Below are positions 22,285 to 64,000 of a stretch of DNA of 64,000 bases, piece by piece. Under the pieces are notes generated by a model. That model ran no database searches and was not told where the DNA came from. It worked only from the letters and a program-made list of their open reading frames with translations. The stretch lies in contig JBHGNT010000018.1 in the NCBI GenBank assembly GCA_043228905.1, forward strand, positions 4,712,001 through 4,776,000. The letters are read 5' to 3'. Source of the stretch: Azolla caroliniana (Eukaryota > Plantae > Polypodiophyta). Made by a program: the position numbers and the translations under genes. The first letter of the stretch is position 1. The number at the start of each line of letters is the position of its first letter.

Positions 22285-22371
22285 CGTGGGACAGGACCTT
22301 GTCCGTCGGACCCACGACTTACAAAATACTAACAACATTACAGAAATTGCTTTTTAGGCGTGATCCTCCTT

Positions 22372-25300: not shown

Positions 25301-25468
25301 CAGGTCCAAAGCAGCCCGAAGCACGTTGTTGGTGATGGCTTCGGGACAAATACGTCTAGCCACACCTTGGGCATCCGAGTGCGCGGGGGCATCGATGATC
25401 TTCAGGTAACCGTCCATTCCTCGTTCCTGGAGCCAGGCGCGGGTTTCTGTTGAAGCGGTAAGAGGCAT
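22372..25468 (-). pseudogene. Degenerate extra (accessory) ORF downstream of integrase, about 1,030 codons: globular N-terminus, Pro-rich linker, long coiled coil
   Basis: Consecutive same-strand ORF pieces (25016-25468, 24644-24895, 24041-24277, 23359-23904, 22372-23334) are separated by single stops or frameshifts. The C-terminal half is E/K/Q/A-rich. Confidence 0.7.
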
Positions 25469-31490: not shown

Positions 31491-34400
31491 CAAGGGCGTG
31501 GTACGTGAAGGCTCGTAACAGAGGCGTCGTGAGGGAGAAAATGATCAGAGATAAAACACTAGCGAGATCTTGATAGGCGTGGGCGGCGCTGAAATCATAA
31601 GTATGAGCCAAAGCACAGACACATGGAGCAAAATGGGCACAAATAAGATATATTACTGCAACACCAAAAGGATTACAGAACACGGCCTACGGCCGGTGAC
31701 CTTACAGGATTATCTAGTTACAATGGACTAAGCTAGTGCTTCCGGCTATATTTTCTGCTCCCACTCTGAGGTACTGGACCTCATTTAAATAACGTTTCCC
31801 CTAATACACAGTCGAGCCGTCGGTGGCCCATGATACTCAGACTCGGCGCTCGCTGGTGTTCTTTCCTACTCGGTTACACTACCGCTGTTTGCTAATTTCC
31901 TAATTCTATATTTTTGTCCTCTGGACAACATTATTGAACTATGCGTAGTTCGGTCTGCCCATAACGCGCAAGGTAGAAGCCGTGGCCAGTTCCCGACTTG
32001 TCCTCCGCATGCCCGCACCAACGCTTTTACGATCGACCCGTGCCCACGCTCCACCTTCCCATTAGCCTCCGGATTGTATGCCGTAGTGAGGGAGAGCTTA
32101 ACCCATAGTCATCCAAACAACTCTTCTTCTTCCTGCGCATCCAACTCTCCCTAGTCAGCCACGATCTTCCCTACGCATCCATACCGACATACCACCTCTT
32201 CGATTAGGAACCGGCACACAACTGCAGTCGTCTTGTTCGCCAATGCACGACCCTCCACCTGATTCGTCAAGTCTTCTCGCGCAAGCACCATGTACCGCAT
32301 CTGCCCTACCCCCATCGACATCGTCACTAAGTCCACTATCCACTTGAAATGGACAAACGATGGGTAGGTCGGGTGTAGCTTGTCTCGATGTCAAATCGCG
32401 CAGTGCATTTGGCAGCTCTTGCACGTTGTTACGAACTAGTACACGTCCCGGTACAGCCCTGGCCACCAATACTTCTCCTTTAGCTTTTCGAATGTGGCCC
32501 ATGTCCCGCGGTGTCTAGCCCAAGGAGTCTCGTGATACGCCGTCAGCAACGCCTCTTGCTCTTCCTTCCCCGCCACTACGCGGAGTGGAACGTCGCGTCT
32601 CTTTTTCGGGAGCTTCCATATGTCCCCGTCCCATAGGAAGAATCGGTACGACTTCTTCCGGATCTGGCCAGCCTCTTCCCTTGTCCATGCCGTGTCCGGC
32701 GCCATTGTTTTCAAGAACCTGCCGATCTGGAGCCACTCCCCGTCGTACTCCCCTTCGTTGAACTTGTTAAGTGCCGGAGTGCTCCCTGCCCTTGTCGTTA
32801 CGTAAGCCGACTTGAAGAAGTCTATGCCGACTTCTTCGTCCTCCGAAACCATGCTGTCCTCGTCGTCGAACCGTGCTCTAGAAAGCATGTCGGCCACGAC
32901 GTTGTCTTTACCGGAGATGTGCCAGATCTTCGGGTTCAGAGACTTAATGTACGCGATCCACCTGAGCATTGCCAGGTCCGGCGTCGCGCATCCGGAAACC
33001 ATACCAAGGATCGGTAGGCAGTCCGTCTCGATTATCACCTCCGTCTCGATCAAGTAGTCTTTATTGGCCTTGATTGCTGAAACACTTGGGCGTATACTCG
33101 CTGTTGCTCACTCAACACCTTTGCTCCGAACCGGATGGAGAACCTCATGCCGGTTTCGTCCTCCTGGTTGACCACCCATCCTATCCTGGTCAGGCTTGTG
33201 TCTACCGTAACGTAAATTGGGACGTCCTTGCCGTAAACTGCTTTTCGGAGTGCCGGTGCCGCAGTTAGCGCCCCATTCAGTCTACGAACCGACTCCGCAT
33301 GCTCCTCACCACACTCGAATTTACGCCCCTTCTTTAGCAACCCGTAGAGCGGGTAATGCGGAATCCAGATATGGTAGAATGCGCAAGTGCCTAGGAACCT
33401 CCGCACCTCCGTAACTGACTTGTATTCTTCCTTCATTACGGAGATGACCTCTACCTTCGCGGAAGACGGTTTCTGGCCATAAGCCCTGCACAAGTGCCCG
33501 ACCACTAGGATCTCCGGCTGCCCAAAAGCCGACTTCTCTCCGGAGAAGGTGAGCCGCGCATCCTCTAGCCTTTGCAACACCTTCTCGCAGTCGCCGATGT
33601 GGTCCTCAACGAATCTCCGGCAACCATCCGGCCCAACTGATTCATCCTTTCCTTCCACCGGGCACCCTTTTATCGGGATGTCATCCAAGAATGGCATGGT
33701 GATGTTCGGGATGCAATCCCTCAGCACCTTATTCATTGCATTCACCATGTGTTCCATCGAGTTGGTCCCTGCTTGCGGCAGGGTACACATCCGCACTAAG
33801 CCGAGAGGAGTTCGCATCGTCGTAATGTCCCTGCTCTCCACAACTAGTTGGAACTGATCGTACCCTGAGTACAGATCCCCGACCGAATAGATCGAACTTC
33901 CGGCGAAGGCCTCCGCGAACTCATCTATGGTCGGTCCGATACCTACGTTCCGGATGGTCACCTTGTTGACCGGCTGCAGGTCTTGAATAAAGCGCAACGT
34001 GTCATTCTTCATTGGCACGGTAAACCACCAATTCGAATATGGAGCACTCGATGGCTCGAGGATGCCCATCTCCACCTTCTGCTTCAACAACTCCATCAAT
34101 TTCGGGATGTGAGCTATGGGTACCGGAATCGGCTTGAGATTCCACGACACATGCGGTACCGTGAAGATCACCATTGGTTGCACGATCATCGGGTCTACGC
34201 ATCCGATCTCCCCCGGCGTGATTGCGAAGGCCCTCCCGTGCCTTCTGAGCATTCTTCGAAACCGGTCCTCCTCTGGCGGCAGTAGGAAGCTACCCTCACT
34301 GACTTTGAGCTCCCGTAGCGTTATGTCGGTGAACCGGTGTCCTATACCGGACGGATTCTATAAACTTGGGTCCGATGCAACCCCCTTTTTCCGCTCTCCG

Positions 34401-35966
34401 CTGCCCTCTGGCAAGGGAGCCGTGACTGGCCTCACCTTCCGGTCCACAGTCTTGTATTTTGTATCTATGCAGGCCGTCGATCCGACCTGACCCTTTCCCC
34501 GAAGTCGGCAATGACTTCGTATATCTCCACTGAGTTGACTGGAATCACTCGATCTTCAGTGAGGCCTTCATTGATCACCTTTCCCATTTCCCCTAAGGTG
34601 TCGTTGAAAGAGACCGCCTCCACAGCGCTGCTGATTTCTTTGTCGGGGCGGAGGACTCCGTACTCCTTGAAACGTTCCTTGGCCCTCTTCTTCTCCTAGC
34701 CATCGACGCCAACTATCGTACAACCTCCGTTGTCGGAGACCCAAAACTTCCTACCTATAGTACACTTGTGGGGTTTTGCTGGAGTGTCAGGACTATCACG
34801 ACCCCACGCCTTGATAACCCTCTCTAAAAATCCCCTCGGCTGTCGCCGTCGAGGGTCTCGCGGTTACGATCATGGTTCGGTCGCACTGTCAGAAATTGGA
34901 CGGAGTGTCACCCATCTTGGCTTTTCACTCGTGCGTACGCCGAACTATTATCCAACACCTTTGTTTCCATGCGTGTTGCTGTAATGAAATCTTGCTTCGA
35001 TAGCCGAAGTGCGTCATCGAGGAGCCGCCCCTCGAACTCTTCCCAGGTCCGGCATCCGGCCTGCACCTCGAGCACCTCTGCGTGAATGCCTGGTGTTGCC
35101 ACCTGAGGGAATCCGGCCAACCGGTTGTCTTCCGGAATGTCCCTCATCACCATCCATTCTCGGTAGGCCGCCAAATAGCTCGTGGTGTCCTTCCCACCGA
35201 ACCAGCCTATTGTGCCAACAATTGCTTCAATGGCCCTGTCGAGGGCGCCCGTGCCCTTGTGAGCACTTACTATTCGATCAACTGTTGCCACTATGGCTTC
35301 GGCGACCTCTGATCCTCTCATCTTCGACTCCTCTGCCGCCTTTTTCATGTCGGGTTCACCAAATTATGTCGTGTTGTTCCGCTTTCGCATAGGAAATAAG
35401 GCGGGACCGCGGGGGCCCTGAACCGAGGAGCAAGAGAGAGAAGGAGGTGGAGCGAGAGAAGTGCGCACGCGTAAGGCCGGTTAGGCCCGTTTGCAACTGA
35501 CAACACTTGCTAGCTAAATGAACCTCTAATGCATATCTGAACAAGATGCACACTCGCGTAAAAGAGAGACTCATAGAAACACAGAGAAAGGGAAACAAGA
35601 GATTCGATTCCAATAACAGAAAAGGTTACAGTGTTTGCAAGATTACAACCGGATAGCCGGCGATAGACCCAACCCAGATAATCACACACCCACGCGCACA
35701 CACAGAAGAGCCTTGCCGGAAAGCACACGGGCTTTCCTCGAAGCAGAGATCCGCTACATCCTGGTCACATCACTTTTTTTCTCCGTCCCTTCGGACAGAG
35801 ATCCGCTTCGATTTACTAGCCTATTATTATATTCTTCCTAGGATATACACATCACGCTAGCCTATTCCTAGTTATGTACAATGTGTTGGTTTGAGAACAC
35901 ACACGTAAGTGCCTTTTCACACGCCGAATTCCATGATTCCTCCTAAGGCTGGTTTTCTCCACGACA

Positions 35967-36792: not shown

Positions 36793-39475
36793 CGATCTAC
36801 AATTTGTCACCAACCGAGCTAGAAGTCCTTCGAGCCTATATAGAGGAGATTTTGGAAAATGGTTTCATTCGGCATTCGAAATCTCCAGCTGGCGCACCCA
36901 TTTTATTCGTCAAGAAAAAGGATGGATCACTTCGTCTCATTGTAGATTACCGTGGCCTGAATAAGGTCACCATAAAAAATAGGTATGCACTTCCCCTTAT
37001 CTCAAGTCTTTTAGAACGGATCAATGGTGCAAGGTTCTTCATGAAGATCGACTTACGAGGAGCATATAACCTCATACGGATCTGACCAGGAGATGAATGG
37101 AAGACCGCGTTTCGCACCAGATATGGGCACTTCGAGTATACAGTCATGTCGTTCGGCCTCACTAATGCGCCAACAGTCTTCTAGCACATGGCAAATGATA
37201 TATTCCGAGATCTCTTGGATGTTTGTTTGATCATCTATTTGGATGATCTACTGGTTTATTTGAAGACCCAAGAAGAGCACGATTCTCATGTACTATTAGT
37301 ACTAAAACGACTTCGAGAACATGGACTTTATGCAAAGCTTGAAAAATGTAGTTTCGGGTGCAACCAAGTGGAATTTCTGGGCTATGTCATCTTGTTGAAA
37401 CGCATCTCCATGGATCCAGCTAAGGTCAAAACGGTGGTAGAGTGGTAAACTTCGCATTTGTTGCGAGATGTGCAATGCTTTTTAGGCTTTGCTAATTTCT
37501 ACCGCAAGTTTATACAGGATTACTCAAACCTTGTTCTGTCTCTCACACAACTTACTAAGAAGGGTCAATCGTTCATTTGGTCTGAAGAAGCGGACATGGT
37601 TTTTGAGAATCTTAAGAAGGAATTTACATTGGCTCCTATTTTGGCTCACGCTAATCCAGAAAAACCATTCATCATGGAAGCGGACGTGTCGGATTTCGCA
37701 TTGGGTAACATTCTGTCACAACAAGGTAATGATGAAAAGCTACATCTTGTGGCTTTCCACTCACGCAAGTTTGATGACGCCGAAATCAATTATGAAATTC
37801 ATGATAAGGAGCTATTAGCAATAGTGGACTCTTTTACGCAATGGGGGCATTTTCTAGAGGGATCCTCTCATCAAGTCACCGTATTCAGCGATCACAAAAA
37901 CCTTGCCTACTTTAAGAGTACTCGTGTGTTAAATTGATGTCAAGCTCGATGGGCCCAATTCCTCATGCGTTTTGACTTCAAAATTACATATCATCTGGGG
38001 AAGCACCAAGGGAAGGCAGATGCATTATCACGACGTTCGTATCTAGCACCGTGTCTTGGTGAGCCAACTTTCGATAACCAAAAGCAAGTAATCTTGGGAC
38101 CGGCACGACTACAAGCAACACAGGTCTTCGGCATGCACTTGGATTCCCACGTTATCGATACCATACGTGAGGACTTGAAGACAGATGATTTCGCCCAAGC
38201 CATTCTAGCACATATTGATCCCTCTCGAGCATCTTGTTCATAGTCGCAACAACCAGGTACGGACTATCGACAATTCGAATGTCATGATGGATTACTATTC
38301 TTTAAGAAACTCTTGTATGTTCCTAATGGTTCTTGCCGCCTTCGAGTAGTTCAAAACTGTCATGACACATATACAGTTGGGCATTTTGGTAGTACTAAGA
38401 CATTAGATTTAGTACAATGATCATTCTGGTGGCCATGTATGCGACAATTTGTCGAAGATTTTGTTCAGACTTGTGATACATGTTGCAGAGAAAAAATGCC
38501 AAGGCATCATCCATATGGTTTATTAGAACCATTACCAACTCTAAGCAAGTCGTGGCTATCTATTGCTCTAGATTTCATCACAGATCTTCTAGTCTCTAAG
38601 GGATTCAATGCGATTTTAACAGTAGTAGATCAATATACGAAGATGGCTCATTTCCTACCATGTACTAAGGAAATCTCCAGTGAAGAAACCGCCGAAATTG
38701 TCGTGCGGGAACTATGTCGGCATCATGGCCTTCCTGATAATATCATCAACGACCGTGGACCCCAGTTCGTCTTGAAATTCTGGAAGCACCTTTTTAAAAT
38801 GCTCAAGGTCACTTGTAACCTCTCCTCCGGCTACCACCTGCAAACCAATGGCCAAGCAGAACGAACAAATAAAACACTGGAGTAGTATCTTCGGTGCTTT
38901 CTAAGCTATCTATCATCAGGATGATTGGGCAGATATTCTCCACTTCGCAAAATTTTCCTATAATAACTCTGTCCACTCATCGACTAAAGTTACGCCAGTT
39001 TATGCTTATACGGGTTGTCACCCCCGGTGGTGTGTATTTGAAACCCCAGAGTTACCCACAAATCCTTGCGCAGAGGATCGTTTGGAGTAGTTACGCAAGA
39101 TACAAGCAGATTTATCTACTCATCTACAACAAGCTCAACAAACACACAAGGTTTACGTGGATTGTCATCGGCTTCCATCCAGTTTTAACATTGGAGATCG
39201 GGTATGGCTACTACGACGACACATCAAGACTACTCACCCATGCAAGAAGTTGGATTATCGGCGATTAGGTCCTTTCCGTATTATCGGAAAGTCTGATTAA
39301 TGATGTCGCTTTTCGTCTCTATCTACCCCCGCAATTTTGCATACATCCGGTGTTTCATAGTTCTCTCCTCGAACCCTATCAAGACAACACCATCCCAGGA
39401 CGTATTCCACAACCTCCACCCCCAATCGAGCTTGAAGATGGACTTGAGTACGAGGTTTCCGCCATCCTCGTGACA
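36793..39475 (+). mobile_element. Chromovirus pol (RT, RNase H, integrase, GPF motif, start of chromodomain); probably the continuation of copy 2
   Basis: [70 protein letters not shown] and EDGLEYEVSAIL (chromodomain start, truncated). Confidence 0.92.
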
Positions 39476-39477
39476 CT

Positions 39478-39764
39478 TGTCATGACATTAAAATATAGCT
39501 TTAAAAGAACAAATGAGCTAGCCTAATGGTATGTGCCTTGTGTTTGGTATGTGAGGTTGTGCGTTCAAGTCTCTCAAATGTTATTCAATACAATATTTTA
39601 GCTTATTTTTCTATCGTGAAGCAAATCCTTCACGACACCTAGACCCCCACATGCTCCTACTCATTGAGGCTTCATACTCTATATAACCTTTTACAAAGAT
39701 TTGAATAAGCTCATATAAATTGATAGAGGTTATTTTCTCATCGTGGCATGGAAACGTCATGACA
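39478..39764. mobile_element. Solo-LTR-like element (287 bp) with a tRNA-like A/B-box module
   Basis: Termini TGTCATGAC / GTCATGACA. Plus-strand TAGCCTAATGG...GTTCAAGTCT at about 39519-39572. The flanks ACACT/ACGCG do not form a TSD. Confidence 0.7.
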
Positions 39765-42700
39765 ACGCGGTGCTAGATACGCGTATCGTGATAAAGCATC
39801 TACCTTCCCTTGCTGCTTCCTAGGACGATATGTAATTTTGAACGAAACGAGTGATGAATTTGGGCCCACTGAGCTTGACGTTGATTTAAAACACGAGCAT
39901 TCTGGAAGTAGGCAAGATTTTTGTGATCATTGAATACGGTGACTTGATGAGAAGATCCCTCTAGGAAATGCCTCCATTGCATAAAAGAGTCCACTATTGC
40001 TAATAGCTCTTTATTGTGAATTTCATAGTTGATTTCAGCGGCATCAAACTTGAGCGAGTGGAAAGCCACAGGATGTAGCTTTTCATCATCGCCTTGTTGT
40101 GAAAGAATGCTACCCAAGGCGAAATCCGACGCGTCTATCTCAATGATGAATGGTTTTCCCGGATCAACATGAGCTAGAATAGGAGCCTTCTTAAGACTCT
40201 CAAAAGCCATGTCCACTTCTTCAGACCAAACAAATGATTGCCCCTTCTTGGTAAACTGTGTGAGAGGCAGAATAATCTTGTATAAACTTGTGGTAGAAAT
40301 TCGCAAAGCCTAAAAAGCATTGCACATCTTGCAATGAACTTGGAGTCTGCCACTCTACCACAATTTTGACCTTAGCTGGATCCATAGAGAGGCCTTCCGG
40401 GGAGATGACATAACCTAGAAATTCCACCTGGTTGCACTCGAAACTACATTTTTCTAGTTTTGCATAAAGACCATGTTCTTGAAGCCGTTTTAGTACTAAC
40501 AGTACATGAGAATCATGCTCTTCTTGGGTCTTCGAGTAAACGAGTAGATCATCAAAATAGATGATCAAACAAACATCCAAGAGATCTCGGAATATATCAT
40601 TTGCCATGTGCTGGAAGACTACTGGCAGATTAGTGAGACCAAATGGCATGATTGTATACTTGAAGTGCCCATATCTGGCGGAAACGCGGTCTTCCATTCA
40701 TCTCCTGGTCGGATCCGTATGAGGTTATATGCTCCTCGTAAGTAGATCTTTGTGAAGAACGTTGCACCATTGATCCGTTCTACAAGACTTGAGATAAGGG
40801 GAAGTGCATACCTATTCCTGATGGTGACCTTATTCAAGCCACGGTAGTGTACGACGAGATGAAGTGATCCATCCTTTTACTCGAAGTGCCCATATCTGGC
40901 GGAAACGCGGTCTTCCATTCATCTCCTGGTTGGATCCATACGAGGTTATATGCTCCTTGTAAGTAGATCTTTGTGAAGAACGTTGCACCATTGATCCGTT
41001 CTACAAGACTTGAGATAAGGGGAAGTGCATACCTATTCTTGATGGTGACCTTATTCAAGCCACAGTAGTGTACGACGAGACGAAGTCCCAAAACCATGGT
41101 AATCCCAAAACAATGGGATGTTCTGGGCTACTAATTATATTGAATGATACTTCAAACGCTAAATTATCTAGGACAATATTAATTGGCTTTGACTCTTCTA
41201 TGATATTCCCGGAAGCAATGGGACAACCATCAATGACTACTACAGAGGCTGGACAAGGGATTTTTCTTAGGGATATTTGATGAGGTTTGACAAAATTCCT
41301 ATCCATGAAACAAGAATTAGCCCCGGAATCTAGGAGTGCTAAGACATGTACTGGAGGGGTACTTTTAGTACTAACTATTACTAGAGCTAAGAACACATTG
41401 TTAACTTGCTTAGAGGGAATGGAACCACTAATGGGTTGCACAGATCTAGGGCTGCCCAACCAAACGACTCCTATTTTTGCTGAACTTAGTTGTTTAACTC
41501 CTCTTCTAATTGACTAAGGACAAAAAATTTGTTCGATAGATTTGGGCTATTAGTACTATTAGGACTATTAGATATTCCTACGAAAATAGACTCGTGTTTA
41601 GTACAATTAGAACTAGCAACTATTTGGTTTACCTGTCTTCTTGGCCTATGGGGATAGTTCACTACAATATGCCCTGGTCCACTGCAATAAAGACATAGTT
41701 GATTTGCTTGGCGTCGCTGCTTTTCCTCTTCCGATAATGGTCCGCGACGATGTGGAGTATTTTGTTGGAGACGCATTATATGATTCCCTTGGAACAAGTT
41801 TTGCTACCACTGAGGCATAGGTGGGCTTTGATCTTGTCCTTGGCATCTAGAACTGACGTTCCTAACGTCGTTCAAAAAGACGGTTATCGCATCGCACCAC
41901 ACGACTAATCGCTTCTATCAATGACTTTGGGTTTTCAAGGAAAGTTAAGAGTAAATCCTTAACATCGTTATGTAGGCCAAAACGAAATTGTTCCATGAAT
42001 GCTTGGTCATCCTAGGGAATATCGATGGCGAGAAGACGGAAATCCGTAGCATAAGCCAAGGTCGGCCGCTCACCTTGGCGCAATCTCCGGATTTTGTTAA
42101 TTGCCGTCCTAACACTGTCGGTATCTCCGAAACAAGCTTTAAAATCGATAATAAACTCTTCAAAATTATTTAACAAGGAGGAGCTTATTTCTAACAGGGG
42201 GGCAAACCATGCCAAAGTTGTGCCACTAAGTAGAGTGCCTACTAGTCCCACTCTTGATGCATCGGTGGGATATCGAGAAGGATGCATTTGAATCACTACA
42301 TGTACTTGATTCAAAAAACCTCTGAACTGTGATTAGGTCCCGTCAAATTTTGTAGGAAGTTCGATCTTGGGTTCTTTGTCCTTGTTGTTGTAATGATATA
42401 ATAGTCGCTTCACGTTTTTGTACACGTAACGTCAGCTCCCTGTGTTGTTGTTTTTCCAACGCTATTTGTTGAAGATCCCCCAACAAACGGTGATTTTCTT
42501 GTTCTAGTGCTACAAATTTCTCTTTTAAGCATTGGAGCTATGAGAAAACAGATTGGTATTCCTGAGCGCTAACAGTTGCCATTTTACTAGGGAGGATAAG
42601 AGGATTAGTACGAAGGGAATGAGGGATAAGAGGATGAGGAGGGAAGGAAAAATCGGTTCAAACTATCAGGAATAGTACTAAAACAGAGAGAGAATTAGTA

Positions 42701-43113
42701 CTAGAGAAGGGAAGTACTATGAGGATCAGTACTAAGAAGAAGGGACAACGTAAGACTCACAAGAGAGGAAGAGAGAAAAGGATATATATATATAATATAC
42801 AGAGAGAGAGAGAATGATGATAACCAGACGATATATTATATGAAGAGGTAAGTACAAAATAGCTATGAGGCTTAAGACAGGTGTTGAACCGATTTGGTTT
42901 GAGAATAATGCCTTGTGCCTCATTTTATACTATTTTCAGGAGTACTCCTAAAGTTTCTAGAATGTTCCAGAGAAATATGGAATATACATCAAATTTCTAA
43001 AGTGAAATAATAAATGAAGATATTATCCTTTGTATTACAATATATAGTTTAATGGCAAGCGCTCGACCCATGTAAAATAAGGTCATGGGTTCAAATCTTG
43101 CCATATCATGACA
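39765..43113 (-). mobile_element. Chromovirus copy 3: 5' LTR 42664-43113, gag, protease, RT (internal deletion plus ~240-bp tandem duplication), RNase H; 3' truncated
   Basis: Homologous to copies 1 and 2 and to pol 36793-38050. The segment NKVTI(R/K)[17 protein letters not shown] is duplicated at about 40660-40860 and 40880-41085. Confidence 0.9.
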
Positions 43114-43955
43114 CCTGCTTTCCTCGACCCGTCCAGTTCTGCGTTACTTGACCTTCTCGGTCGGCTTGTCTACTCAGAAGGCCCTTTTCAGCTCCCTTGT
43201 TATTGCGACTTCGACACTTCTTGACCCGTTGGTCCCCTCCGTGTCGGTGTCGACTTCTGCTGCCTTCCTCGTCCATTTGCCCTTTTGTTGATTTGGCTCC
43301 TCCGAATCAAACACCTCTTCCGAATCGGCTACCTCCAATTCATTCCAACACTTGTCTGAATTGGTTGTCTCCAATTCGTCATCAACCTTCAGCCCCTTCA
43401 CCACGTCCGAGTCTTGGCCTTCTCCTTTCGGTTGGCTCTGTCCTTCTTGACTCTGCTACCGTCACCCGCTTATTCCGGCTTTATCGGATGTGCCAACTTC
43501 TTCAGTCGACTCAACTTTCCTTTTTCCTCTTGTCTCCCCCTACTTCGGTTGGCTTTGGCTTGGGCTATCCATTCTAGTGGCTCCCCCTACGTCCGGTCTT
43601 GGCTTTCTTGACCGACCTATGCACTACGACTTCTTTAGTCGGGCCAAAGTCAAAATTGGTTTCCCGACTCAGCTTTATGGTCTTCTTTTTGGAATCCTCC
43701 TTTCATTCCTCCCCCTCAAGCTCGGCAAATCGAGGTACTGGACACCCAGTGCACCGTTCTCTCGGGTGAAGTGGAACTATTGCATGTTTTGACAGTTCAC
43801 ACCCAACACTAAGCACATTGAGGTGCACTATCATTTTGTCTGAGATTGCGTTCTCTCAGGTGAAGTGGAACTGCTGCATGTTTCCCACGGATCAACAAGT
43901 GGCCAATATCTTCACCAAAACCCCTCAGCTTAGACAAGTTGCAACATTTTTCCCA
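43114..43955. mobile_element. Copia B 3' fragments: post-pol region on minus (43114-43752) and an inverted RNase H C-terminus on plus (43753-43955)
   Basis: Plus strand: TKHIEVHYHFV..DQQVANIFTK..LDKLQHF. The minus strand continues GALGVQYLDLPSLRG. Confidence 0.75.
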
Positions 43956-44367
43956 TATATAGAACACGCGTGCACACACACACACACACACATGTTGTAC
44001 ATACAATACATACATACACACATGCCATATACACAATACATACATAAGCACATGCATAGAACATACACAATTACCCAATATAGTAGATACATACATACAA
44101 CAGATGCAATATAATACATACATATGCACACACACCAAATATACATACATACGTAAGGCACATGTACACACACACACACCACACACACACACACACACTA
44201 CAACATTATTTTTAAAACGCGTGAGTACTCACGCTAATTGTTTCAAAAAAAGGGGGGAAGAAAAGGGGGAGGGGGATTACATTAGTGTTTTCGGGGGGGG
44301 GGGTACTGGAATGAAGAGAATGAAAGGGAGGGGAGTATACATATTTTGATGTGGGGCAAGAAGAGGG

Positions 44368-44910
44368 AGAGACAGATTGAAACCGTGGCGGAAAACTCAA
44401 CGGCCACAACAACTGGCTCACCTCCATTTCTTGCCCCATCATCGATGGGTACATGATTGTCTCTGCTTCTCGAGACAAGTTTCTTGTTGTGTGGTCCCTC
44501 ACCCGAGACGAAACTATGGCAATACGAAGAAATGCCCCACAAGTCATGGTCACTTCGTATAAGATGTTGCCATCTCTTCCAATAGGAAGTTTGCTCTATC
44601 AGTATCAGGGAGTTGGGATGGAGAGCTTCATCTGTGGGATCTCTACTCCGGTGCTACAAACCGCTGATTCACTAGACACTCTAAAGACGTTCTGAGCGTT
44701 GCCTTCTCTGCAGACAATCATCATATCGTTTCCACGTCGAGAGATCGATTCATCAAGCTTTGGAACACTCTCGGCGAGTGCAACTATACTATCCAAGATA
44801 GATGCACACACCGGTTGGGTATCATATGTTACTTGTCACCTGTTACTGCGAATCCTATCATGGTTTATGGTTCATGGGACAAATATGTGGTGTGGAACCT
44901 TAATAACCTT
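44368..44910 (+). pseudogene. RACK1: RACK1 (WD40 scaffold / ribosomal protein) N-terminal fragment with stops and frameshifts
   Basis: [78 protein letters not shown] and GSWDK..VWNL match plant RACK1 WD repeats 1-4 in order. Confidence 0.9.
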
Positions 44911-45197
44911 AAATCACCCACTAATTACAACAATAGGTCATAGTTGGGAGCTCCTCCACACAAAGGAATATTATATGAAAATCCATCCATGCTATTGCAA
45001 GTGAGTTGATATAAAAAGTTCGACATTATGGGTTGTATGTACAGTTGTTGTAATCATGTTGTGTAGTTTTTCTCCTCCTAATGATTTTTCCATGGGTATG
45101 GTATTTTTACGCAACAAACATTAAGAAATATGCATTTTTGTTGAAAGAATTGTCAATTTTGGGTCAGATATTAAAATAATTTTATTTATACTTGCAA

Positions 45198-46003
45198 GTT
45201 GGGAAAGTGTGGAAAATGGATCAACCAAATAATTATCCAAAAGTTGTTGTCGCATGCAGGTAATGACATGCATGTTTAATGTGTTTTGTGAGCATTTTGT
45301 TTATGCTTTCACTTCAAAAGTTTCATTGTTTAATACAATCATAAAATGTAGTTCTTGAAGAATTTTAAATTGGGATTTTTTTTTTCGAATGATTCTCAAC
45401 GCTCATAGGCGTGGCTATCATTTGGGCCTATGCATACCTCCTGACACCAATGGGAGCCTACAGACATACATGCCTTTGATGTTATTGCTTCCAATTGCTA
45501 GATTGATCGAGCGTCATTGGTTGTTTCATCACCTTGGTAATTTGAGCCATATTGATTGTTTCTATTGTTCATTGCACAATATAACATCGTTTTTGAAGTG
45601 TGGGCAATTAGATAGAGTCACCCTTTGAAAATCAATAAATATAAGTGATGCGAATGTATATCTCAATGTTATCTATTTTTGGGCAAGGAAGAACATGTAA
45701 GGGCATGATGTAACACGATGGTGAATAACACTTACATAAATGTGTTACTCATGGATAAATATTGGATACACATTTTTTGGTCATATAAAATCATTGTTCC
45801 TCTACCGATTCTCTTTTAGTAATTCCTAGTTATATATTGCAAGTTATATGTATCTAAGTTGATATTTAGATGGAACATCAAGGTTGCCGAAATTGTGAAT
45901 TTCTAAGCTTTGCATTCCTTATACTCTTCAATGGGGTGCTTCGACATTTCATGCAAGTCATATGGTCAACATGATGGTTGCAGTGCTAGTTTCCATGGTT
46001 GAG
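45198..46003 (+). pseudogene. NAT: Nucleobase-ascorbate transporter (NAT/NCS2) internal fragment: three exons (~45198-45259, 45352-45536, 45907-46003) with introns retained
   Basis: VGK.VENG...Q|gt; FLKNFK...FE*FSTLIGVAIIWAYAYLLT..GAYRH..NC*IDRASLVVSSPW|gt; LCIPYTLQWGASTFHASH...MMVAVLVSMVE|gt. These match plant NAT1/2-type motifs. Confidence 0.82.
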
Positions 46004-47450
46004 GTAAATTTGTCATGTTAAAGTATGTTACTAATACAAGAGGCATAATTGAAACTCTATTTTGGTTTTATTTGTTGTGAATTGGATACATGAATTCCCA
46101 CAATGTGTTTTCATTATGTAACAGTTAATTTGTCAAGACCAAACCTATCTATGATAAATATTGTTGTTGAGACCAAACCTTTCAGATTAGATGTTCTTGA
46201 ATCTGAACCTTTGTGGGTTCCATAGCTTACTTGCTATGTTTCTTTCGTAGAGAGATTAAGGGCTATGGCTATGGAAGAGATGTTTAAAGGTTAAAAGAAT
46301 TGTGTGTGGTTGCATTGTAGGAACTTAAGGACTTAAATGCTGAAGTTTTCTTAGAGAAAAACTCAGTATGTGTTTGTTTTGGCATTGTAGCAACTTCATG
46401 TAGTGAAGTTCTTTCTCAAGTTGAATGTTGTGAATTATTCTTGCACATCACATGGTATATTCTTGTTATGATATATCTTCTGTTAGATATATCATTTTTC
46501 ACTTCCATGAAACCACGATATATGCAATGTTACATAGGCATGTCAAAGAAGATGGCATTGAAGGTGATCCTATTCTTTGAATGAAGGTGGTGTGAAGACA
46601 CACATACTCTCCACGCTCACATACATGAAAATATACATACAAACAAGCAAACATACATTCATACATACACACACAACAAACACATTCTAAACAAAAGAAA
46701 TGTAGAAAAGAAAAACAAAAAATACAAAAATGAAGAAATAAATAAATAAATACTTGTTAAAAATAGTAAAAACAAAAAATAAACACGTTGCAAAATTATT
46801 GTATGTGAGTGATGCCAATAGTGATGAGTTTTGGCATCACCACCAACCTATTTTATTGTGACATGTATAGAATACACATTCACATAGATCTAACATGCAC
46901 ATATTTAGAACACATATATACATACATACATAGACACACTGAACATAGACACATAGACACATGGCATAATACAATACATACAACACGTGCAATACAGTAC
47001 AATACATACATACATACATAAACATGGAATACAATATAGTACATGTATACATACACATGCAATACAATACAATACATAAACATGGAATACAACACAATAC
47101 ATACATACATACACATGCAATACAATACAATACATAGACATGGAATACAACACAATACATACACATAACATATACATACATACATACAACCATGCATAAA
47201 ATATGCCCAACTCATTCAAATAATACAATGCAGATTGATATACATCTCTATGATATACATGCGTTTTTCTATGTAAGGGTATTTTAAATAGTTGTTGTCA
47301 AAATATATATTGACAATAAGGGGTATTTTTATTAACTGTTTTTTTACAAAAGGGTTCTAAAATAGTGAAAAAACATATGTATAAGGGGTTTATAAAAGAT
47401 ATCTTGAACGCACGTGATACAACCTCTTTAAATATAGTGGAGCCCCCGGG

Positions 47451-47722
47451 CCCCAAACACTTATATACGCAAGAAAGAGTAGTCCTTTTACGAGGGAGTT
47501 TGTTGGCATAAAAGCCCGACTCCTTCCGATTTGTATCCATCCTAGTGTGAACTCGTCCACATAGTTAGGGCTTAGTATATAAGCAATAACCTAACGTTGT
47601 AAAGACAGAAGAGATACACATTGTATCAAGTCTCTGCCTTCCTTCCTTTCTGTGTTGTTTTCCGAGTACGCAAACAGGTTCCCATACGCTTCCGCATATG
47701 CACACACCTACCAAACCCTCTA
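47451..47722 (+). mobile_element. LTR fragment displaced by inversion (continues the Copia C PPT end at 52003-52020)
   Basis: Begins with the TSD copy CCCCAAAC, contains TATATAA and ends CTCTACA. Confidence 0.6.
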
Positions 47723-48559
47723 CACTCTCCGGATTAGTGGATTGAATCCGAATTGGTTGAGCCGGAGTGCTCAACCGGATGACGAGCTGGCGAGTAGTGA
47801 GGACTCAGTAGTGCTCTCCCACGTAAGGAGCCGAGGAGACAGTTCATGCGCAGAGAAAAGGGGAAGAAGAAGATGCTGGAATACGACACCGACAGAGATG
47901 AGTTGGATTGGAACGAATCCGACTCCGAACAGAACGAAGATGGACCTTCTGAAGAGAAGTCCAAGATGGCCAAGAAGGCCATGAAATCGGCGAATCCGGA
48001 ATTGTGCCAATCCACCCGCCAGAAGAACCTTGTGAAGAGGTACGGGTATAATGAATATATGGCACATCATTATTGTTGAGAGGTGTTGCCATAGACTTGC
48101 ACTCAGTCATCCCGAACTTGTATAACAAGTTGAGAATGTAGTGCCGTTGGGAGATCATAATCTCGGCTACAAGCCGAATGTACCGGATACCGTCCGAACC
48201 GGATACGAGCCGAAGTGGACATCAACCAAAGTAGCCGACCAAAATTGAGCTTGAGGGGGCGTGTTGAGAATCAAGCTCAACCTAGTCTAGTGTGTGAACA
48301 CACCCTTGAGAGTGTGCACTCAAAGGTCAAAAGTCACCACTCTTATCCACACATTAACTATGTGTGATAGAATCATATTCTATGACACATAACTAATGAG
48401 CTTTCACATTCCCCATGACCCATGAGCTTCAGTAGTTAATAAAGAGAGAGAGTGACTATATAAATCACTCTCCTCCTACTTTGTAATAGGTTAATTAATC
48501 TCCTTTGTAATATACATTTGTCTTGAGTATTCTATTGTCTTTCAAATCTATCTATCTTG

Positions 48560-48600
<41 letters not shown>

Positions 48601-49890
48601 CTCACACACACTCACAACACATATCTCTAGTCTATTCCGCTACACAAGAATCACCACCGATTCTTTACAATTATGCGTACATGGCGAAGGTGGCAGCCAT
48701 GCGTGAGCCGGAGAGCTACGCAGAAGTAGCTAAGGACCCGAATTGGTGGAAGGACATGGAGGAAGAGATGCATGCACTCATGGAAAATGAGATGTGGGAT
48801 TTAGTGGATGTACCGAAAGGAGTTAAAACAATCGGTTATCGGTGGGTATACAAGTTTAAATACAACACCAATGGCTCCGTCAATAGGTACAAGGCTCGGT
48901 TGGTGGGAAAGGGCTACACGCAGCAACACGACGGTTCAGCCCCCCGAATTTTAGTATGGAATGAATACATCGGCGGTGTGCCGATTAAATATCTCCCTCT
49001 ACGGACTTAAGCATGCTTGGAACTCGAAAATCACGTAGAGACTACGTCAGATGGGGTTTGCTCTATCGAAATCAAACTCTTCACTCTTCATCCAGCAAGG
49101 TTGGAATGGACCAGTGAGCATATTGCTCTATGTGGATGATCTTGTCATCGCCAATGCCAACCTGGACGAGATCGACCACGTGAAATTCCAGCTTGTGGCA
49201 TCATTTGAGATGAAGGATCTAGGAGACGTTCACTACTTCCTCGAGATTGAAGTGATCCATACCCCCGAGGGCATACTGATCAATCAACGTCATTATGCGC
49301 TGAGTATGCTCTTCAAATTCGGTATGACGGAAAGCAAATCCGTCTCGAATACAAATCCGTCTCTACTCTTATAGACCGGAATGCGAAGCTTCGCCCCGAC
49401 TCCGGAACGGCATGCGACCTGAAAAGGTTCCGACAGATAGTCGAAAGCCTTATCTATCTGACCATCACCCGATTGGACCTTAGTTATCCAGTTGGATTGA
49501 TTAGTCAATTCATGGTGCATCTGACTGTGGAGCACCTTCAATGCGCGCACCGAATACTCAGGTATGTTAGCGGCACTAAGGACAGGGGGAGTGTTGTATC
49601 AAACCAGTGTAGCCGGACAAGTTTTCGGCTACACGGATACCGATTGGAACAGAAATGCCGGTGACCGTAGGTCTACATCCGGGTATGCATTTTCACTTGG
49701 AAGCGTTGCGGTCTCCTTGAGCAGCAAGAAGCAGCCGACAATAGCATTGTCGAGCACCGAGGCCGAGTACCGAGAAGCGGTTGTCATGACATGCGAAGCC
49801 ATATGGCTCAAGAGGCTCCTAAAGGATCTGCATGTGGAGGTATCCGATCCGACCATGATCTATTGCAATAACCTTAGCAACATCCTATTG
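47723..49890 (+). mobile_element. Copia B INT-RT linker, RT and RNase H N-terminus, inverted relative to the rest of Copia B
   Basis: REPESYAE, RYKARLVGKGYTQ, LLYVDDLVI, GYTDTDW, SKKQPTIALSSTEAEY and IYCNNLS motifs. Confidence 0.88.
48074..48669 (+). mobile_element. Small rearranged Copia insertion: inverted RT scrap, PPT and LTR (48262-48669)
   Basis: TG...CA ends with a perfect 5-bp TSD ATTAT (48069-48073 / 48670-48674). PPT GAGGGGGCG precedes TGTTGAGAA. Confidence 0.85.
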
Positions 49891-50012
49891 GCATGTGTCT
49901 ATGTATGTATGTGTTAATGTTTGTGTGTGTGTGTATTTTCTATATATGCATATGTATGTATGTATTGTATGTATCATATGTGTAGCATGTGTCTATGTAT
50001 GTATGTATGTGT

Positions 50013-50050
<38 letters not shown>

Positions 50051-50251
50051 CTATATTTCTACATATGTATGTATGTATTATGTATTGTATATATAGCATG
50101 TGTCTATGTATGTATGTGTTATGTGTGTGTATTTTCTATTGATGTACATATGTATACATATTGTATTGCAGGTGTATATATGTATGTGTGTGTGTGTGTG
50201 TGTGTGTGTACATATTGTATTGTATTGCATGTGTTGTATGTATTGTGTATG

Positions 50252-50288
<37 letters not shown>

Positions 50289-51724
50289 CTTTACATGTGC
50301 ATATGTATGTATTCCATGTATGGCATGTGTGTATGTGTTATGTGTGTGTATTCATGCATACAATACAATACACACACACACACACACACATACAACACGC
50401 ACCACATACATATATACACATGCACGTATGTGTGTGTGTAGGTATGTACATTTGTATTGTATGTATGCATGCATGTATGTACATGTATGGATGTAAGTTG
50501 GTAACATTTATAAATGTATCATTGTAGGCATGTGTACGTATGTACACAATGTATGAATGCTATATGTATGTTCATGTACGAATGCATGTATGTGTATATA
50601 TGTAATATGTATGGAATTTATGTATCTTTTCAGGGTATTTTCGTGTTTAGTATGTGTATGGCTCATATATGGATGTATGTTTGCAATCTGCACATAATAT
50701 ATATGCATATATCCAACGTATGTGTAAGTATACATATATCTAATGTGTGTGTGTGTGTATATATATGTAACTTATAAGTATTGTAATTTGTATGACCCCG
50801 TATTACCTATGTATATATATGGTGATATGTGGAATATGTATGTATGTATGTATCTGTATACATATATGCATATGTCCATGTACATGATTCGATGTGTTTG
50901 GATGTGTGTTTATAACATTTGCATAATATGTATGTATGTGTATGTGTATGTGTATGTATATATGTACTATTATATTGTGTATGACCATGTGTGTATTTGT
51001 GTTTGTGTATGTGGTGATATGTAATAATGTATGTACATATGTAATGTATGTATGTGTGTAATATGTACGTAATATGCACTCATATATATGATGTGTGTGT
51101 ATGTATGTAAATATTTAAGTATTGTAGTTTGTATGGTCCCATATAACCTATATATATATATATATATATGGTGATATGTGGAATAAATGTACATATGCAA
51201 TATATATACATATATATATATATGTAATAATGTATCTATATATGTAATGTATGTATGTGTATGTAAATTTGTATATTGTGTAATATGAATGGATTATATG
51301 ATATGTAGCATGTAATTTATTTATGTGTTTGCGTGTGTGTGTGTGTGTATATATACATATATATAACTTGTTTGTATGTATGTAGATTTGTAATACATAT
51401 AATATGTCACTATACGTATTTATGTGTATGTGTATGTGTGTGTATATATAATATGTAATTTATTTATGTATGTATATTTTTTGTGTTTGGTATGTATATA
51501 TGTATTTGTATATAATTGTGTGCATAATAATATATGTGTGTAATATGTAACATACAAAATATGTATGTAGCATATATGTATTTGTGTATGCATTTACATA
51601 TGGTAATATATATTTGTACATATATTCATATTTAGTCAGTATGCATTATAAATGTGTGTAATGCATGTATATACATATTCATGGATGTAATGTTTGAATG
51701 TAGGTATATGTGCATGTATGCATG

Positions 51725-51756
<32 letters not shown>

Positions 51757-52002
51757 TGCTACTCCAAAATTGACTATTGTTTGCATAATATATTCTTTAC
51801 TATCTAATTGAAATATCTAATATTTCATGGGCTTATGTAATTTTTTTCTATAGTGTAATTGATAACACCCTTATGTAAATATATTTTTTATCTATTTATT
51901 AATACCCTTATGTATATATATTCTGTATCTCAATGGTTAATTTAAACCCCTTTTGATGAACTCATGTGCTATCATACAAGTTTTGACAGTGAAGCCCCCG
52001 GG
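49891..52002 (-). mobile_element. Other arm of the CCCGGGGG DNA transposon: long TGTA/TG low-complexity array and AT-rich subterminal region
   Basis: Ends ...AGTGAAGCCCCCGGG at 52002 followed by GTTTGGGG. The array is the reverse-complement polarity of the TACA arrays at 43965-44200 and 46620-47200. Confidence 0.75.
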
Positions 52003-55000
52003 GTTTGGGGTATCTCCCCGTAAATCTAGATTACAAGATTATCCTAAATTTACATTACAAGTCAGTCGGCATGCGGCCGAGTTGGCAGAGGTATAGTAAG
52101 TGTAGATAGAGTTGTTCTGATTAGGTCTTACCTACTGTCCCTCGTTCGGTTTTCTTCTGCTCGATCGCTTGTCATAGTCCCATCTTCGTCCTTAGTGCTT
52201 TGAAGCGTACATTTGGGAGTGGCTTCGTCAGGCAATCAATGATGTTCACCTCGGTGTCGATCTTCCGGACTTCAAGCTTCTTCTCGGTTACGAGCTCGCG
52301 GATGTGATGATACTACACCTCAATATGCTTCTTCTTTGCGTGGTAGACGGGATTGTTGATGAGGTGTATTGCGCTCTGTGAGTCGCAATGGATGGTTGGC
52401 GATAGCCGGTCATTTCTACTTCGGTGCAACCAGATCACTTCCTCTGCTGCTTCCGATGCCGCTGTGTACTTGGCTTCTGTAGTAGACAAAGTCGTGCACG
52501 CTTGAATTTTCGACCTCCAAGATATTGCACAACCACCATAGGTGAAGATGTAGCCTGATGTTGATTTCTGATTATCTGTATTTCCAACATAGTCGGAATT
52601 GGTGTAGCCTTCAACTTCGGTTGAGGTTGTCAAACCGAAAGTCAGCTGTGTATCTTTGGTCCCTCTCAGGTACCTGAAGATGTTCTTGACGGCCTCCCAA
52701 TGCTTCCGTCCTGGGTTAGACATGTATCGGCTGACCACCCCTACAACATAGGCTAGGTCAGGTCGGTCGTCACCATTGCGTACATGATACTTCCTACGGC
52801 CGATGCGTAGGGCATCTTTCCATTAAGCTCTCTCTCCTTGTCCGTTGAAGGAGAGTCTTTGTTCGGTAGTCGGATCGACGTCGGAAGCGGTGTTGGTGTT
52901 GGCTTTGCATTCTCCATGTTGAAGCGCTTCGGCACCTTCTGGATATGGTCGGAATGGGAGAGTCAGAGAATCTTGGTCGTCCGATTTCGCTCGATCCTCA
53001 TGCTCGGTATGTGTCAGGCTTGTCCGAGTTCCTTCATCACGAACTTGTCGTGAAGTCTCCGCTTCAACTTTTCGATCTCTACTTGATTGCTTCCTACAAT
53101 CAGCATGTCGTTGACATATAGGATCAGATAGATCCTGGACTCGTCGGCCAGTTGCCGAACATACATACATGGGTCGAAGTCAGTTCAGCGGTATCCAAGT
53201 TGCCTGATGTAAGAGTCAAACTTCTGGTACCACATCCTCGGCACTTGTTTCAAGCCATATAGACTTTTCTTTAATCGACATACGAGGTGTCTTTCCTCCC
53301 CCGTTGCCGAGAAGCCTGCCGGTTGAGACATGTAGATCTCAACCCCGTCTTTACGTCCATCTGCTCAAGCTCAAGGTCTTCTGTCGCTACAACTCCTAGT
53401 AGGAGTCAAAGGGTGGTCATCTTGACTACTGCTGAGAATATCTCATTGTAGTCGACCCCATGTTCTTGCTTGAACCCTTTCTCGACAAGCCGAGCTTTGT
53501 ACTTAGGTTTTTCTGAGTTAGATACATACTTGTATTGGAATACCCATTTCCAAGGTAGCGGCTTTCTTCTAGCTAGTAGTTCAACCAACTCCCAAGTTTG
53601 ATTCTGGTGAATCGAGTCCATTTCAGATTTCATGGCTTGTAGCCATGTTTCGGCGTCTGGTGCGGCCATAGCTTCTTCATATGTGCGTGATTCGCCTGCA
53701 TCAGTGTAGTTGACGTAGTTGAGGCCCGATTGGTAGAACTTTGTTTGCCTTCGAGCTCGTCCAGATCTCTTAAGTGCCGAGTTAAGAGGTTTGGAGTCTT
53801 CGATCGGTTCTGTAGATCGATCGGTACTTGTTGAACCGTTTGTGTCAGGAGTCTTGTTAGGTGACCCGCCCCCATGTCGGGATTTCGATGGTGTCACGTT
53901 GTTCTCCCCTATGGACTTTGTCGTCTCGGTTTTGTTTCCTACTCACATCTTGTTGACTTTGCCTGCTTCGACTCTTGTCGAATCGGCTTTGTCGTCGGTG
54001 GCTTTGTCTTCAAGTTCGACTAGTGGACTTCCTACCGATTCAGAGTCGGCAGGTATGTTGTCGACTTGTTCGAGTTCAACTATTTGTTGAATCTTTGAGT
54101 TGGCCCAGTGGGTCGGTCCTTCTATGACATCTCTGTCATCTTGAAAGGATACCTTTTTACCAACTATTTTCTGTTGGTTCCGCTGAAAGAAGATAGAGCT
54201 TCATTGAAGACTATGTCATTGCTCCGAATCGATTTTCGGTTCTCAAGGTCGCATAGCCTGTAGCCGAATTCCCCATTGGTTCCATAGCCGAGAAATATGC
54301 ATTTCGTTGCTTGGGGTGCCAATTTTGTCCTTTTATCCCTGGGGATGAACGCGTAGGCTTCGCATCCGAATATACGGAGCCTATCGTAGGTCGGTGGTTT
54401 GTCTGACCATAGTGCCTATGGCACTTCGAGCCTAATTGCTCTTGACGGTGCCAAATTTATCAGGTATACTACCGTTTGCAATGCTTCTGCCCAAAATTCC
54501 ATCTTCAGTCCGGCTTGTTGAAGCATTGCCCTCACCCTCTCCTGGATCGTTCTGTTGATCCGTTCTACCATTCCATTTTGCATGGGCGTGTAGGGAATGA
54601 TCTTTTGATGTCGGATCCCTTTGTTGGACAAGTATTGCTTGAAGGCTCTAGAGGTATATTCACCTCCATTGTCGGATCGGAGTATCCTTACTCTGTGTCC
54701 TGACCGGTTCTCCATTTCATATATCCACCGAGTGAAGACCACGAGTGATTCGTCTTTGGACCTGATGGACTATGCCCAAACTTTTCGCATACAGTCATCT
54801 ACAAATGTGATGAAGTACCGGGAGCCTCCTAGTGATCGCTCTGCCATGGGCTCACATATATCTGTGTGCACGAGCTCTAGGGGTTGTTGTATTGTCTCGT
54901 AGTGGAGAGAGTGCAGACTTCGGGTCTCTTTCCCATATCGACAGTGCTCACAGAAGTCTGTCTTTGCTTGGAGTTTCAAGATGTAGCCTTAGTGAGCAAC

Positions 55001-61711: not shown

Positions 61712-64000
61712 CTACACCAACTTTTTGACTATGATAGGAGCACCAAACTTAGGCCTTATGGTAACCATCAACTCTGGAGCATGTTTGTAGGATGGAGATG
61801 GAATGAATGAGAACTTCAAAAGGAGAGTCGCAAGCACAAGCTTTGCCTCCATCAATGCAAATGTCTGACCGATGCAATTACGTGGCCCATGAGCAAAAGG
61901 TAAAAAAGCCATGGGATGCTTCGCCGCTTTGCTAATGCCACTCGAGAATCTTGCAGGGTTGAAATCATAAACTGTCTCACCCCATAACTCTGGGTCCAAG
62001 TGTATGGCTACAATAGGAATTAAAACGGACATGCCCCTTGGTACAAATAAGTCTCCCAACTTCAAATCACACAAAGCCACCCTAATCACAGAGTTTGCCG
62101 GTGAGAACAACCTCAATGTCTCATACAATATCATTTCCACCTACAAAACATAAATTATTAGATTGTGCATATTAGATAAAAAATAAATCTTCTCAATGAA
62201 ATCAACAAGCACAAATGTACATACATGATTCGTGCTCCATTGACTTTAGCATTGATAAAAGAACATGATGATAAACCTTGTACATCATGCGATCAAATGC
62301 TAGGTGGGACGAAATGCTCGACAATATTTTCAAACTTTACATCACCATTATATTCCTTTTATGGTGCACAATAAATATGTACAAACAAACTAAGAGGAAT
62401 GATATTTAAGCCTTAAATGGTCGACAAAAAAAACTTTCCTAAACGTGGCTACAAGTCAAAATGCCCCATAGAGAAAAAAGATGGAGAAGTACTTGTAAAT
62501 GTGTAATGTTATTATGAATCCCTCAAGGAGACACTATTGTTTTTTACTATGCACATAGGTGTACAAAAAGAATGAGGTAATATGTTTAAAGCCCTTAATT
62601 TGTAGACAAAGAGGTAAAAGACATTGATTGAAATCATATCTAAGACCTTGATCGACAAGAATCTTACTGTCTTCATCTTCGAAGCCGAATCGAAATCCGG
62701 GAGCTTTGCCTCACACATGTCAACAACTTCCAACCGAGCTTTCTCTTGCCAACGTGTATTGTGGGCAAGTAGTAGCAATGCCCATGTCAAGAGCAATGCC
62801 GTGGTCTCATGACCCGCAAAGAAGAAGGTTTTGCATTCATCCACGATTTGTTGAACACTAAAATTCTCGCCCTCACTTAACATTAAACCCAACAAGTCAA
62901 CTCCATATGGTGATGACATATTTCCACCTAGTTTGGCTCGAGCTATTGCTTTCCGTTCCTCGACAATCTCTCGGATTGACGTCTCTACAACCCTTTTGAG
63001 ACTTCGTAGCTTCATAAAGATAGGGAGTGGTACATAACTGTAGTTCAAGCAAAATATAGATTGAATGACTACCATGGATAAGCACTAGCTACTTTGTCTT
63101 AGGTCAAGCAATAGGAAAGTATCACTTAGCATCGATGCCTAGCCTCAAATGTTTTAACATCATTTTGTATAAGCAGAGACTAGTATTATATAGCCTTACC
63201 TCATCCCAGGGATAGTCAATAGGTGCCCATGTTTGAAGACAAATTCCTTGAGCTCCTCGAGGTATTGGAACACCTTCCTCCCTCTCTCGTAGCTACTCCC
63301 GAACTGCGTGTGCGCAATAATGTCGGCCGTAAGAGCAACCATGCTCTTCTCAATATCAATCTCGAATTGTCCGTTGTGACTCTTGATTCCTTGACACCAT
63401 TCTTCCACCATAGCCATTGTGAGACCAACCATAACTTGAGAAAAATCCTACACAATAAGCACGAGCATGATTCACAAGGTGTACATTGAATACATCGTGG
63501 ATGGATCCATCCCTCGAGAGACGGGGGGGCCATGGCCAATCAAATGGTCATCCACATGGAGCTCAAACAATTTTGAACCAACCCCCTACCCCCCCCTGCC
63601 CCCCATGGGGCATTGTGAGGAAAAGAATGAAAACTTAGGAGTAAGACCTTTGTTTCTAAACAATAATTTAAAATAATCGCAGGTACCTTGAGCCTTAGGG
63701 AGTGGAAGGCAGGGGCAACAATTTTCCTCTGGTGTGCCCAAGTGTCACCATTGGCTAGGATGAGGCCACTAAGGCCCGTGATGGGCTCGAGGAAGCGTTG
63801 GAGCAATGGAGACTTCCCCATGGCCGATGGAGAGAGGAAATTGTTGTCATTGTACTCATTGCTCTTATTGTGTTTGTTTGTGTTGTTGGCATTGGCATTG
63901 GCATTGTCACTCTTAAGCATGGTAGTCGAAGACGACATGAGTAGTGTGTCCTTCACAACCTTCATGTCAGTAGTGACTACGTGCGGATCGGGACCAATCC
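61712..64000 (-). CDS. Cytochrome P450, CYP72 clan (closest by eye to CYP735/CYP715/CYP714), 5'-partial; exons >64000-63687, 63447-63200, 63037-62668, 62140-61712
   Basis: C-helix WAHQR, I-helix DECKTFFFAGHETT, K-helix ETLR, PARF and heme motif FAHGPRNCIG. GT-AG introns give a continuous frame and are consistent with the usual 5-exon CYP72-clan layout. Confidence 0.93.

What the first reader, a model, noticed from the sequence alone, without database searches (positions are those of the whole stretch)
43956..52010. Pack-type DNA transposon with CCCGGGGG termini and 8-bp TSD that fits none of the usual plant superfamilies
Seen: two ends, AGTGGAGCCCCCGGG (47436-47450) and AGTGAAGCCCCCGGG (51988-52002), are followed by CCCCAAAC and its exact reverse complement GTTTGGGG. 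This is an 8-bp TSD once one inversion is undone. A second imperfect repeat (TGAACGCACGTGATA / TGAACTCATGTGCTA, 12/15) starts exactly 45 nt inside each end, and several AAGGG(G)T motifs run in the same element-strand direction at both ends. The reconstructed element is about 5.6 kb, has no recognisable transposase, and holds TACA arrays plus host-gene pieces. Established: plant hAT ends start (C/T)A, Mutator usually G with ~9-bp TSD, CACTA has a 3-bp TSD, PIF uses TWA and Mariner TA. Inference: very short TIRs plus subterminal inverted repeats plus an 8-bp TSD resemble Zisupton/KDZ-type elements, so this may be an unrecognised gene-capturing superfamily in this plant lineage.
Basis: partly seen in the sequence, partly recalled or inferred. 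Interest (0 to 1): 0.85.

Follow-up and report, generated by a model that had tools for sequence, protein, structure and literature searches.

The report
Gene-carrying fern transposon, probably P-like
This is a real, broken, 5.6-kb cut-and-paste jumping element with unusual ends that carries pieces of two host genes; it most likely belongs to a plant branch of the fruit-fly P-element family rather than to Zisupton, but I could not reach its enzyme to prove that.

Summary
Observation confirmed. The two 15-bp ends, the 8-bp duplication CCCCAAAC, the second in-register block and the AAGGG motifs are all present. Removing the element restores a continuous Copia 3' region (pol end, UTR, PPT, LTR), and the same TACA array runs across the break, so this is one 5.6-kb non-autonomous TIR element. 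A later three-break rearrangement split it (not one simple inversion; no break is at an element end). It carries decayed RACK1 and intron-bearing NAT pieces and no transposase. Nothing supports Zisupton/KDZ beyond the TSD length. The scan found this family before on other DNA (s1-516941, s1-512237, s1-500947, s1-514347); two of those follow-ups report a P-element-like transposase. I could not reach that enzyme. My own supporting clue: the enriched subterminal repeats (TAAGGGTA, TAAGGGGT, AAAGGGTT) are one base from the verified Drosophila P-transposase site TAAGGGTT. Best reading: Pack-type P-superfamily element of a fern, about 60%.

The parts
51988..52002 (-). Terminal inverted repeat, end 1 (reads CCCGGGGGCTTCACT inward)
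52003..52010 (-). Target site duplication copy 1 (CCCCAAAC on minus strand)
51957..51971 (-). Second in-register block, bases 32-46 from end 1
   Evidence: 12/15, p about 0.012
51868..51953 (-). Three subterminal (T/A)AAGGG motifs, 50, 93 and 130 nt from end 1
49894..51760 (-). TACA/CA microsatellite-derived arrays of the element's first arm (about 111-nt higher-order unit near 49900-50130)
43954..44200 (+). Continuation of the same TACA array on the other side of the break
   Evidence: same unit, 73% over 176 nt
44381..44905 (+). Captured, decayed RACK1 (WD40) gene piece with stops and frameshifts
   Evidence: translation; name from my own knowledge of the protein, not database-tested; agrees with note s1-504377
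45400..46003 (+). Captured nucleobase-ascorbate transporter (NAT) piece: two exons (ending 45536 and 46003) with GT donors and an AG acceptor at 45906-45907, so captured from genomic DNA
   Evidence: name from my own knowledge, not database-tested; agrees with s1-504377
46600..47200 (+). TACA arrays of the second arm
47274..47387 (+). Four subterminal (T/A)AAGGG motifs, 64-172 nt from end 2
47405..47419 (+). Second in-register block, bases 32-46 from end 2
47436..47450 (+). Terminal inverted repeat, end 2 (14/15 to end 1)
47451..47458 (+). Target site duplication copy 2 (CCCCAAAC)
47459..47724 (+). Target element (Copia A), downstream part: rest of 3' UTR, polypurine tract 47492-47498, LTR 47501-47724 (TG...CA)
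52011..54990 (-). Target element (Copia A), upstream part: integrase, RT/RNase H remains and start of 3' UTR
   Evidence: rve and SH3 domains
47725..49893 (+). Copia B segment carried in the inverted block (RT, start of RNase H), itself holding an LTR-element remnant 48074-48669 with ATTAT duplication
   Evidence: RVT_2
43797..43953 (+). Displaced 160-bp Copia B RNase H piece; its end joins in frame to the minus strand from 43755 downward
43755..43789 (+). 35-nt filler, 91% identical to 43849-43883, at the third break

Best explanation
A non-autonomous, Pack-type cut-and-paste element of a divergent P-superfamily lineage in a fern-like genome. Shown: it inserted into the 3' UTR of a Copia element and made an 8-bp duplication; it carries genomic pieces of two host genes between TACA arrays; it was later split by a three-break rearrangement that left the two ends in direct orientation, so it can no longer move as a unit in its original form. 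Inferred: a P-like transposase supplied in trans binds the repeated TAAGGG sites inside each end, pairs the 15-bp TIRs plus the block at 32-46, cuts the element out and inserts it with an 8-nt stagger; host DNA was copied in during repair of excision gaps; the rearrangement came from break repair (filler DNA, one break in the array), not from the transposase.
For: TIR, TSD and restored Copia 3' region; array continuity and in-frame Copia B junction. P makes 8-bp TSDs, and its verified binding sites are TAAGTGTA, TAAGTGGA and TAAGGGTT twice (PMC3698922 Table 1); six subterminal 8-mers here are one base from those, against 1.6 in shuffles (p 0.004), and only 0.2% of all 8-mers are that close. 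A divergent marine P element found here ends CAAGGGAG / CAGGGGAT, the same C-x-x-GGG start. Unchecked scan notes on other CCCG-ended, 8-bp-TSD copies report a transposase that folds like P.
Against: I never reached a transposase linked to these ends: DNA scans were blank, and none of the P-like proteins whose source I could look up was named as a plant or came from the fern-like samples. The three P elements whose ends I could see all start CA, not CC. The TAAGGG sites point the same way at both ends, whereas in D. melanogaster P they are inverted. One note calls the plant enzyme's N-terminus non-THAP, which would make the site match a coincidence. GGG-rich subterminal repeats also occur in hAT elements (my knowledge). 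I looked for the P site after seeing the notes.
Confidence: 0.6

Rival explanations
1. Zisupton/KDZ-type non-autonomous element: same mechanics, moved by a KDZ transposase.
For: Zisupton and Dileera make 8-bp TSDs (PMC12730594); short TIR plus a second inner block.
Against: TSD length is shared with several superfamilies; no KDZ gene seen; the words are absent from all other notes on this genome; other copies were linked to a P-like enzyme in unchecked notes.
Confidence: 0.08
2. An atypical hAT or Mutator-like (Pack-MULE-type) family whose termini drifted to CC...GG.
For: 8-bp TSD, short TIR and clustered subterminal repeats are hAT-like; gene capture is typical of MULEs (established knowledge); Mutator-like elements are noted elsewhere in this genome.
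Against: Ends begin CCC, not (C/T)A or G (reference termini from my knowledge); TIR is far shorter than in Pack-MULEs; no such transposase nearby.
Confidence: 0.17
3. A TIR element of an unclassified DDE superfamily, neither P nor any named plant group.
For: CC...GG ends with an 8-bp TSD match no standard entry (my knowledge); divergent P profiles did not reach a fern protein.
Against: My searches were insensitive to such divergence; P-like reports exist for sister copies.
Confidence: 0.12
4. Two unrelated truncated elements, or an assembly error, give the look of one inverted element.
For: The ends are in direct orientation as assembled; no reads could be laid.
Against: Perfect 8-bp duplication, restored Copia UTR-PPT-LTR, shared array unit across the break, in-frame Copia B junction and a diverged filler. 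An assembly error could explain the inversion only, not the element.
Confidence: 0.03

Closest known systems
P superfamily (D. melanogaster P element; BuT5 MITE and repleta-group P, PMC3698922)
   Same: 8-bp TSD; subterminal sites one base from TAAGGGTT; short TIR with a second inner block, as in BuT5 (3-bp TIR, 16-17-bp sub-TIR); non-autonomous copies with interiors unrelated to the master copy.
   Different: Ends CC...GG rather than CA...TG; sites in direct rather than inverted arrangement; kilobase host-gene cargo and TACA arrays; land-plant host; transposase not seen here.
Pack-MULE / Pack-CACTA (Pack-TYPE elements)
   Same: Non-autonomous TIR element with intron-containing pieces of several host genes in one orientation.
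   Different: 15-bp CCCGGGGG TIR and 8-bp TSD fit neither MULE (long G-starting TIR, about 9 bp) nor CACTA (3 bp); reference values from my knowledge.
Zisupton / KDZ
   Same: 8-bp TSD (Zisupton, Dileera), short TIR.
   Different: No KDZ transposase or accessory gene; Kyakuja has 7-bp TSD and CA...TG ends without TIR.
Plant hAT (Ac, Tag1)
   Same: 8-bp TSD, short TIR, clustered short subterminal repeats.
   Different: Termini do not begin (C/T)A; no hAT transposase seen.

Membership tests
TIR cut-and-paste element (non-autonomous) | Terminal inverted repeats flanked by a target site duplication, with a restorable empty site | tested here: met
Pack-type element | Host-gene pieces captured from genomic DNA inside the TIRs | tested here: met
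   translations and splice signals; gene names from my knowledge, not database-tested
P superfamily | 7-9-bp (typically 8-bp) TSD | tested here: met
   reference PMC3698922
P superfamily | Partner transposase with RNase H fold, D(2)H motif and GTP-binding insertion | tested here: inconclusive
   none in the window; no fern partner reached; reported only in unchecked notes
P superfamily | CA...TG termini | tested here: not met
   ends are CC...GG; P elements fetched here start CA; only the C-x-x-GGG pattern is shared with one of them
P superfamily | Subterminal transposase (THAP) sites like TAAGGGTT | tested here: inconclusive
   six sites within one base, enriched, but orientation differs and the DNA-binding domain of the partner is unknown
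Zisupton/KDZ | 8-bp TSD | tested here: met
Zisupton/KDZ | KDZ transposase in autonomous partners | not testable with these tools
hAT | (C/T)A...T(A/G) termini | tested here: not met
   reference from my knowledge
MULE | G-starting, usually long TIRs with 9-11-bp TSD | tested here: not met
   15-bp TIR starting C, TSD exactly 8 bp; reference from my knowledge

The most novel reading that the evidence does not exclude
Ferns hold an abundant, gene-capturing lineage of P-superfamily transposons with changed CC...GG ends that has kept P-type TAAGGG binding sites: a P lineage in land plants, where I found no paper describing one, and a new carrier of Pack-type gene shuffling that standard pipelines would label hAT or miss.
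Probability: 0.5. Interest if true: 0.65.

Novelty: new variant of a known kind. Interest (0 to 1): 0.5.

Why it matters
P elements are a model transposon and a genetic tool in flies, and the distribution given in PMC3698922 lists protozoa and animals, not plants; my paper searches found no land-plant description, though most subscription papers are not held. A fern lineage with altered ends would extend the superfamily to land plants, add a new vehicle for exon shuffling besides Pack-MULE and Pack-CACTA, and give a natural test of how P-type enzymes read their termini (C versus A at position 2). This copy itself is dead and rearranged; its value is as a clean record of ends, target site and cargo.

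Tried and rejected
Helitron or Replitron 3' ends in tandem: rejected, because the flanks rejoin as one Copia 3' region with an 8-bp duplication. Shifting the boundary to start at GGGGG or to a 9-bp TSD: rejected, flanks then no longer duplicate. Transposase-driven (reversed-ends) inversion: rejected, no break lies at an element end. DNA pattern scans for the ends: blank in metagenome and viral contigs; the patterns were strict, so the blank says little. A tree run timed out.

Full report
Observation. The joint chance expectation in this window is about 2e-8. The inner block at bases 32-46 matches 12/15 in register (p about 0.012). [A/T]AAGGG occurs 7 times in the two 185-nt subterminal stretches against 0.49 in shuffles, always on the same element strand, spaced 32-43 nt apart.

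One insertion. Reading the minus strand from about 55000 down gives a Copia element (integrase and SH3 domains; RNase H end), then its 3' UTR up to CCCCAAAC. Continuing from 47459 on the plus strand gives the rest of the UTR, a polypurine tract (47492-47498) and an LTR (47501-47724, TG...CA). The TACA arrays have one polarity along the reconstructed element, and the array unit at 49894-50130 continues at 43954. So a single 5.6-kb element inserted into the Copia 3' UTR. I had no second copy of this Copia to serve as an independent empty site.

The rearrangement. The second Copia (RVT_2 hits) breaks at 49893 in RNase H, resumes at about 43797 on the plus strand, and its end at 43953 joins in frame to the minus strand from 43755. 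The locus therefore needs three breaks, equal to two adjacent inversions, with a 35-nt filler that is a 91% copy of a nearby stretch. No break is at a transposon end, so break repair is more likely than transposase action (inference). A mis-assembly is unlikely given the filler but was not tested with reads.

Cargo. Translation shows a decayed WD40 piece at about 44381-44905 and two transporter exons ending at 45536 and 46003 with GT donors. The retained intron shows capture from genomic DNA. P-type profiles find nothing in the window.

Host. Earlier notes call the genome a fern; I did not verify this.

Superfamily. Earlier scan notes describe at least four other elements in this genome with CCCG-type ends and 8-bp TSDs, and two follow-ups say their transposase folds like the P-element enzyme. 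These are unchecked, and they changed my reading, so I tried to test them. A motif scan gave about 110 P/THAP9-type transposase loci (Pfam support for five of six tested), none with these ends. A search with a divergent core gave 121 P-like proteins; those I could place are stramenopile, green-algal, marine or unplaced. No fern enzyme was reached, so the key test is open. Two clues from my own work lean to P. First, the verified D. melanogaster P sites are TAAGTGTA, TAAGTGGA and TAAGGGTT (PMC3698922 Table 1); six subterminal 8-mers here are within one base (1.6 expected, p 0.004; 0.2% of all 8-mers are that close). Second, a divergent marine P element has ends CAAGGGAG and CAGGGGAT, sharing C-x-x-GGG with CCCGGGGG. 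Against: every P end I saw starts CA, the sites here are in direct orientation, one note calls the plant enzyme non-THAP, and the comparison was made after seeing the notes. Because the CA...TG terminus is not met and the enzyme is untested here, I file it as P-like, not as a proven P member.

Verdict. Real element, real oddity in the ends, Pack-type cargo. Most likely a non-autonomous member of a divergent P-like lineage in a fern (0.6); atypical hAT/MULE 0.17, unclassified 0.12, KDZ 0.08, artefact 0.03. No paper found describing such elements in land plants, within a library that lacks most subscription journals.

No fetched contig was taken for human.

Noticed in passing
window 7425-7520: Another CCCGGGG... 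start followed by a long G run and repeated CTAACGGCA motifs; no partner end in the window and no TAAGGG cluster. May be the end of a different DNA element.
   Followed up: partly
window 36910-41086: Gypsy pol sequence present as 1.1-kb inverted arms (86%) around a 1.7-kb spacer, with a 221-nt tandem duplication at 40657-41086.
   Followed up: no
window 21130-35748: LTR pair 94% identical around 14 kb of nested Gypsy-type sequence, inserted in a Copia element.
   Followed up: partly
window 11400-13426, 16682-18745, 41092-43119: Three related 2-kb gag-bearing repeats at about 80-84% identity, the third inverted.
   Followed up: no
window 48074-48669: Truncated LTR element with a clean ATTAT duplication inside Copia B.
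   Followed up: partly
window 8393-8734: 340-bp imperfect fold-back, MITE-like.
   Followed up: no
window 2375-3580 (-) and 61712-63965 (-): Host genes: a 401-aa frame with a motif I recall from KRP/ICK cyclin-kinase inhibitors (no Pfam hit) and cytochrome P450 exons (Pfam p450).
   Followed up: partly
L122 3742-4221 (-), L127 3303-5018 (-), L123 3078-5024 (-): Several non-animal P-like loci carry a facing second reading frame; for L122 and L127 it matches the C-terminal extension fused to the 1342-aa P transposase P0050 (pairwise E about 5e-8). The domain seems to occur either fused or as a separate convergent gene.
   Followed up: partly
L136-L142: A 7.08-kb marine P-type element, nearly identical in seven contigs with different flanks, intact 1342-aa transposase, ends CAAGGGAG / CAGGGGAT: probably recently active.
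   Followed up: partly
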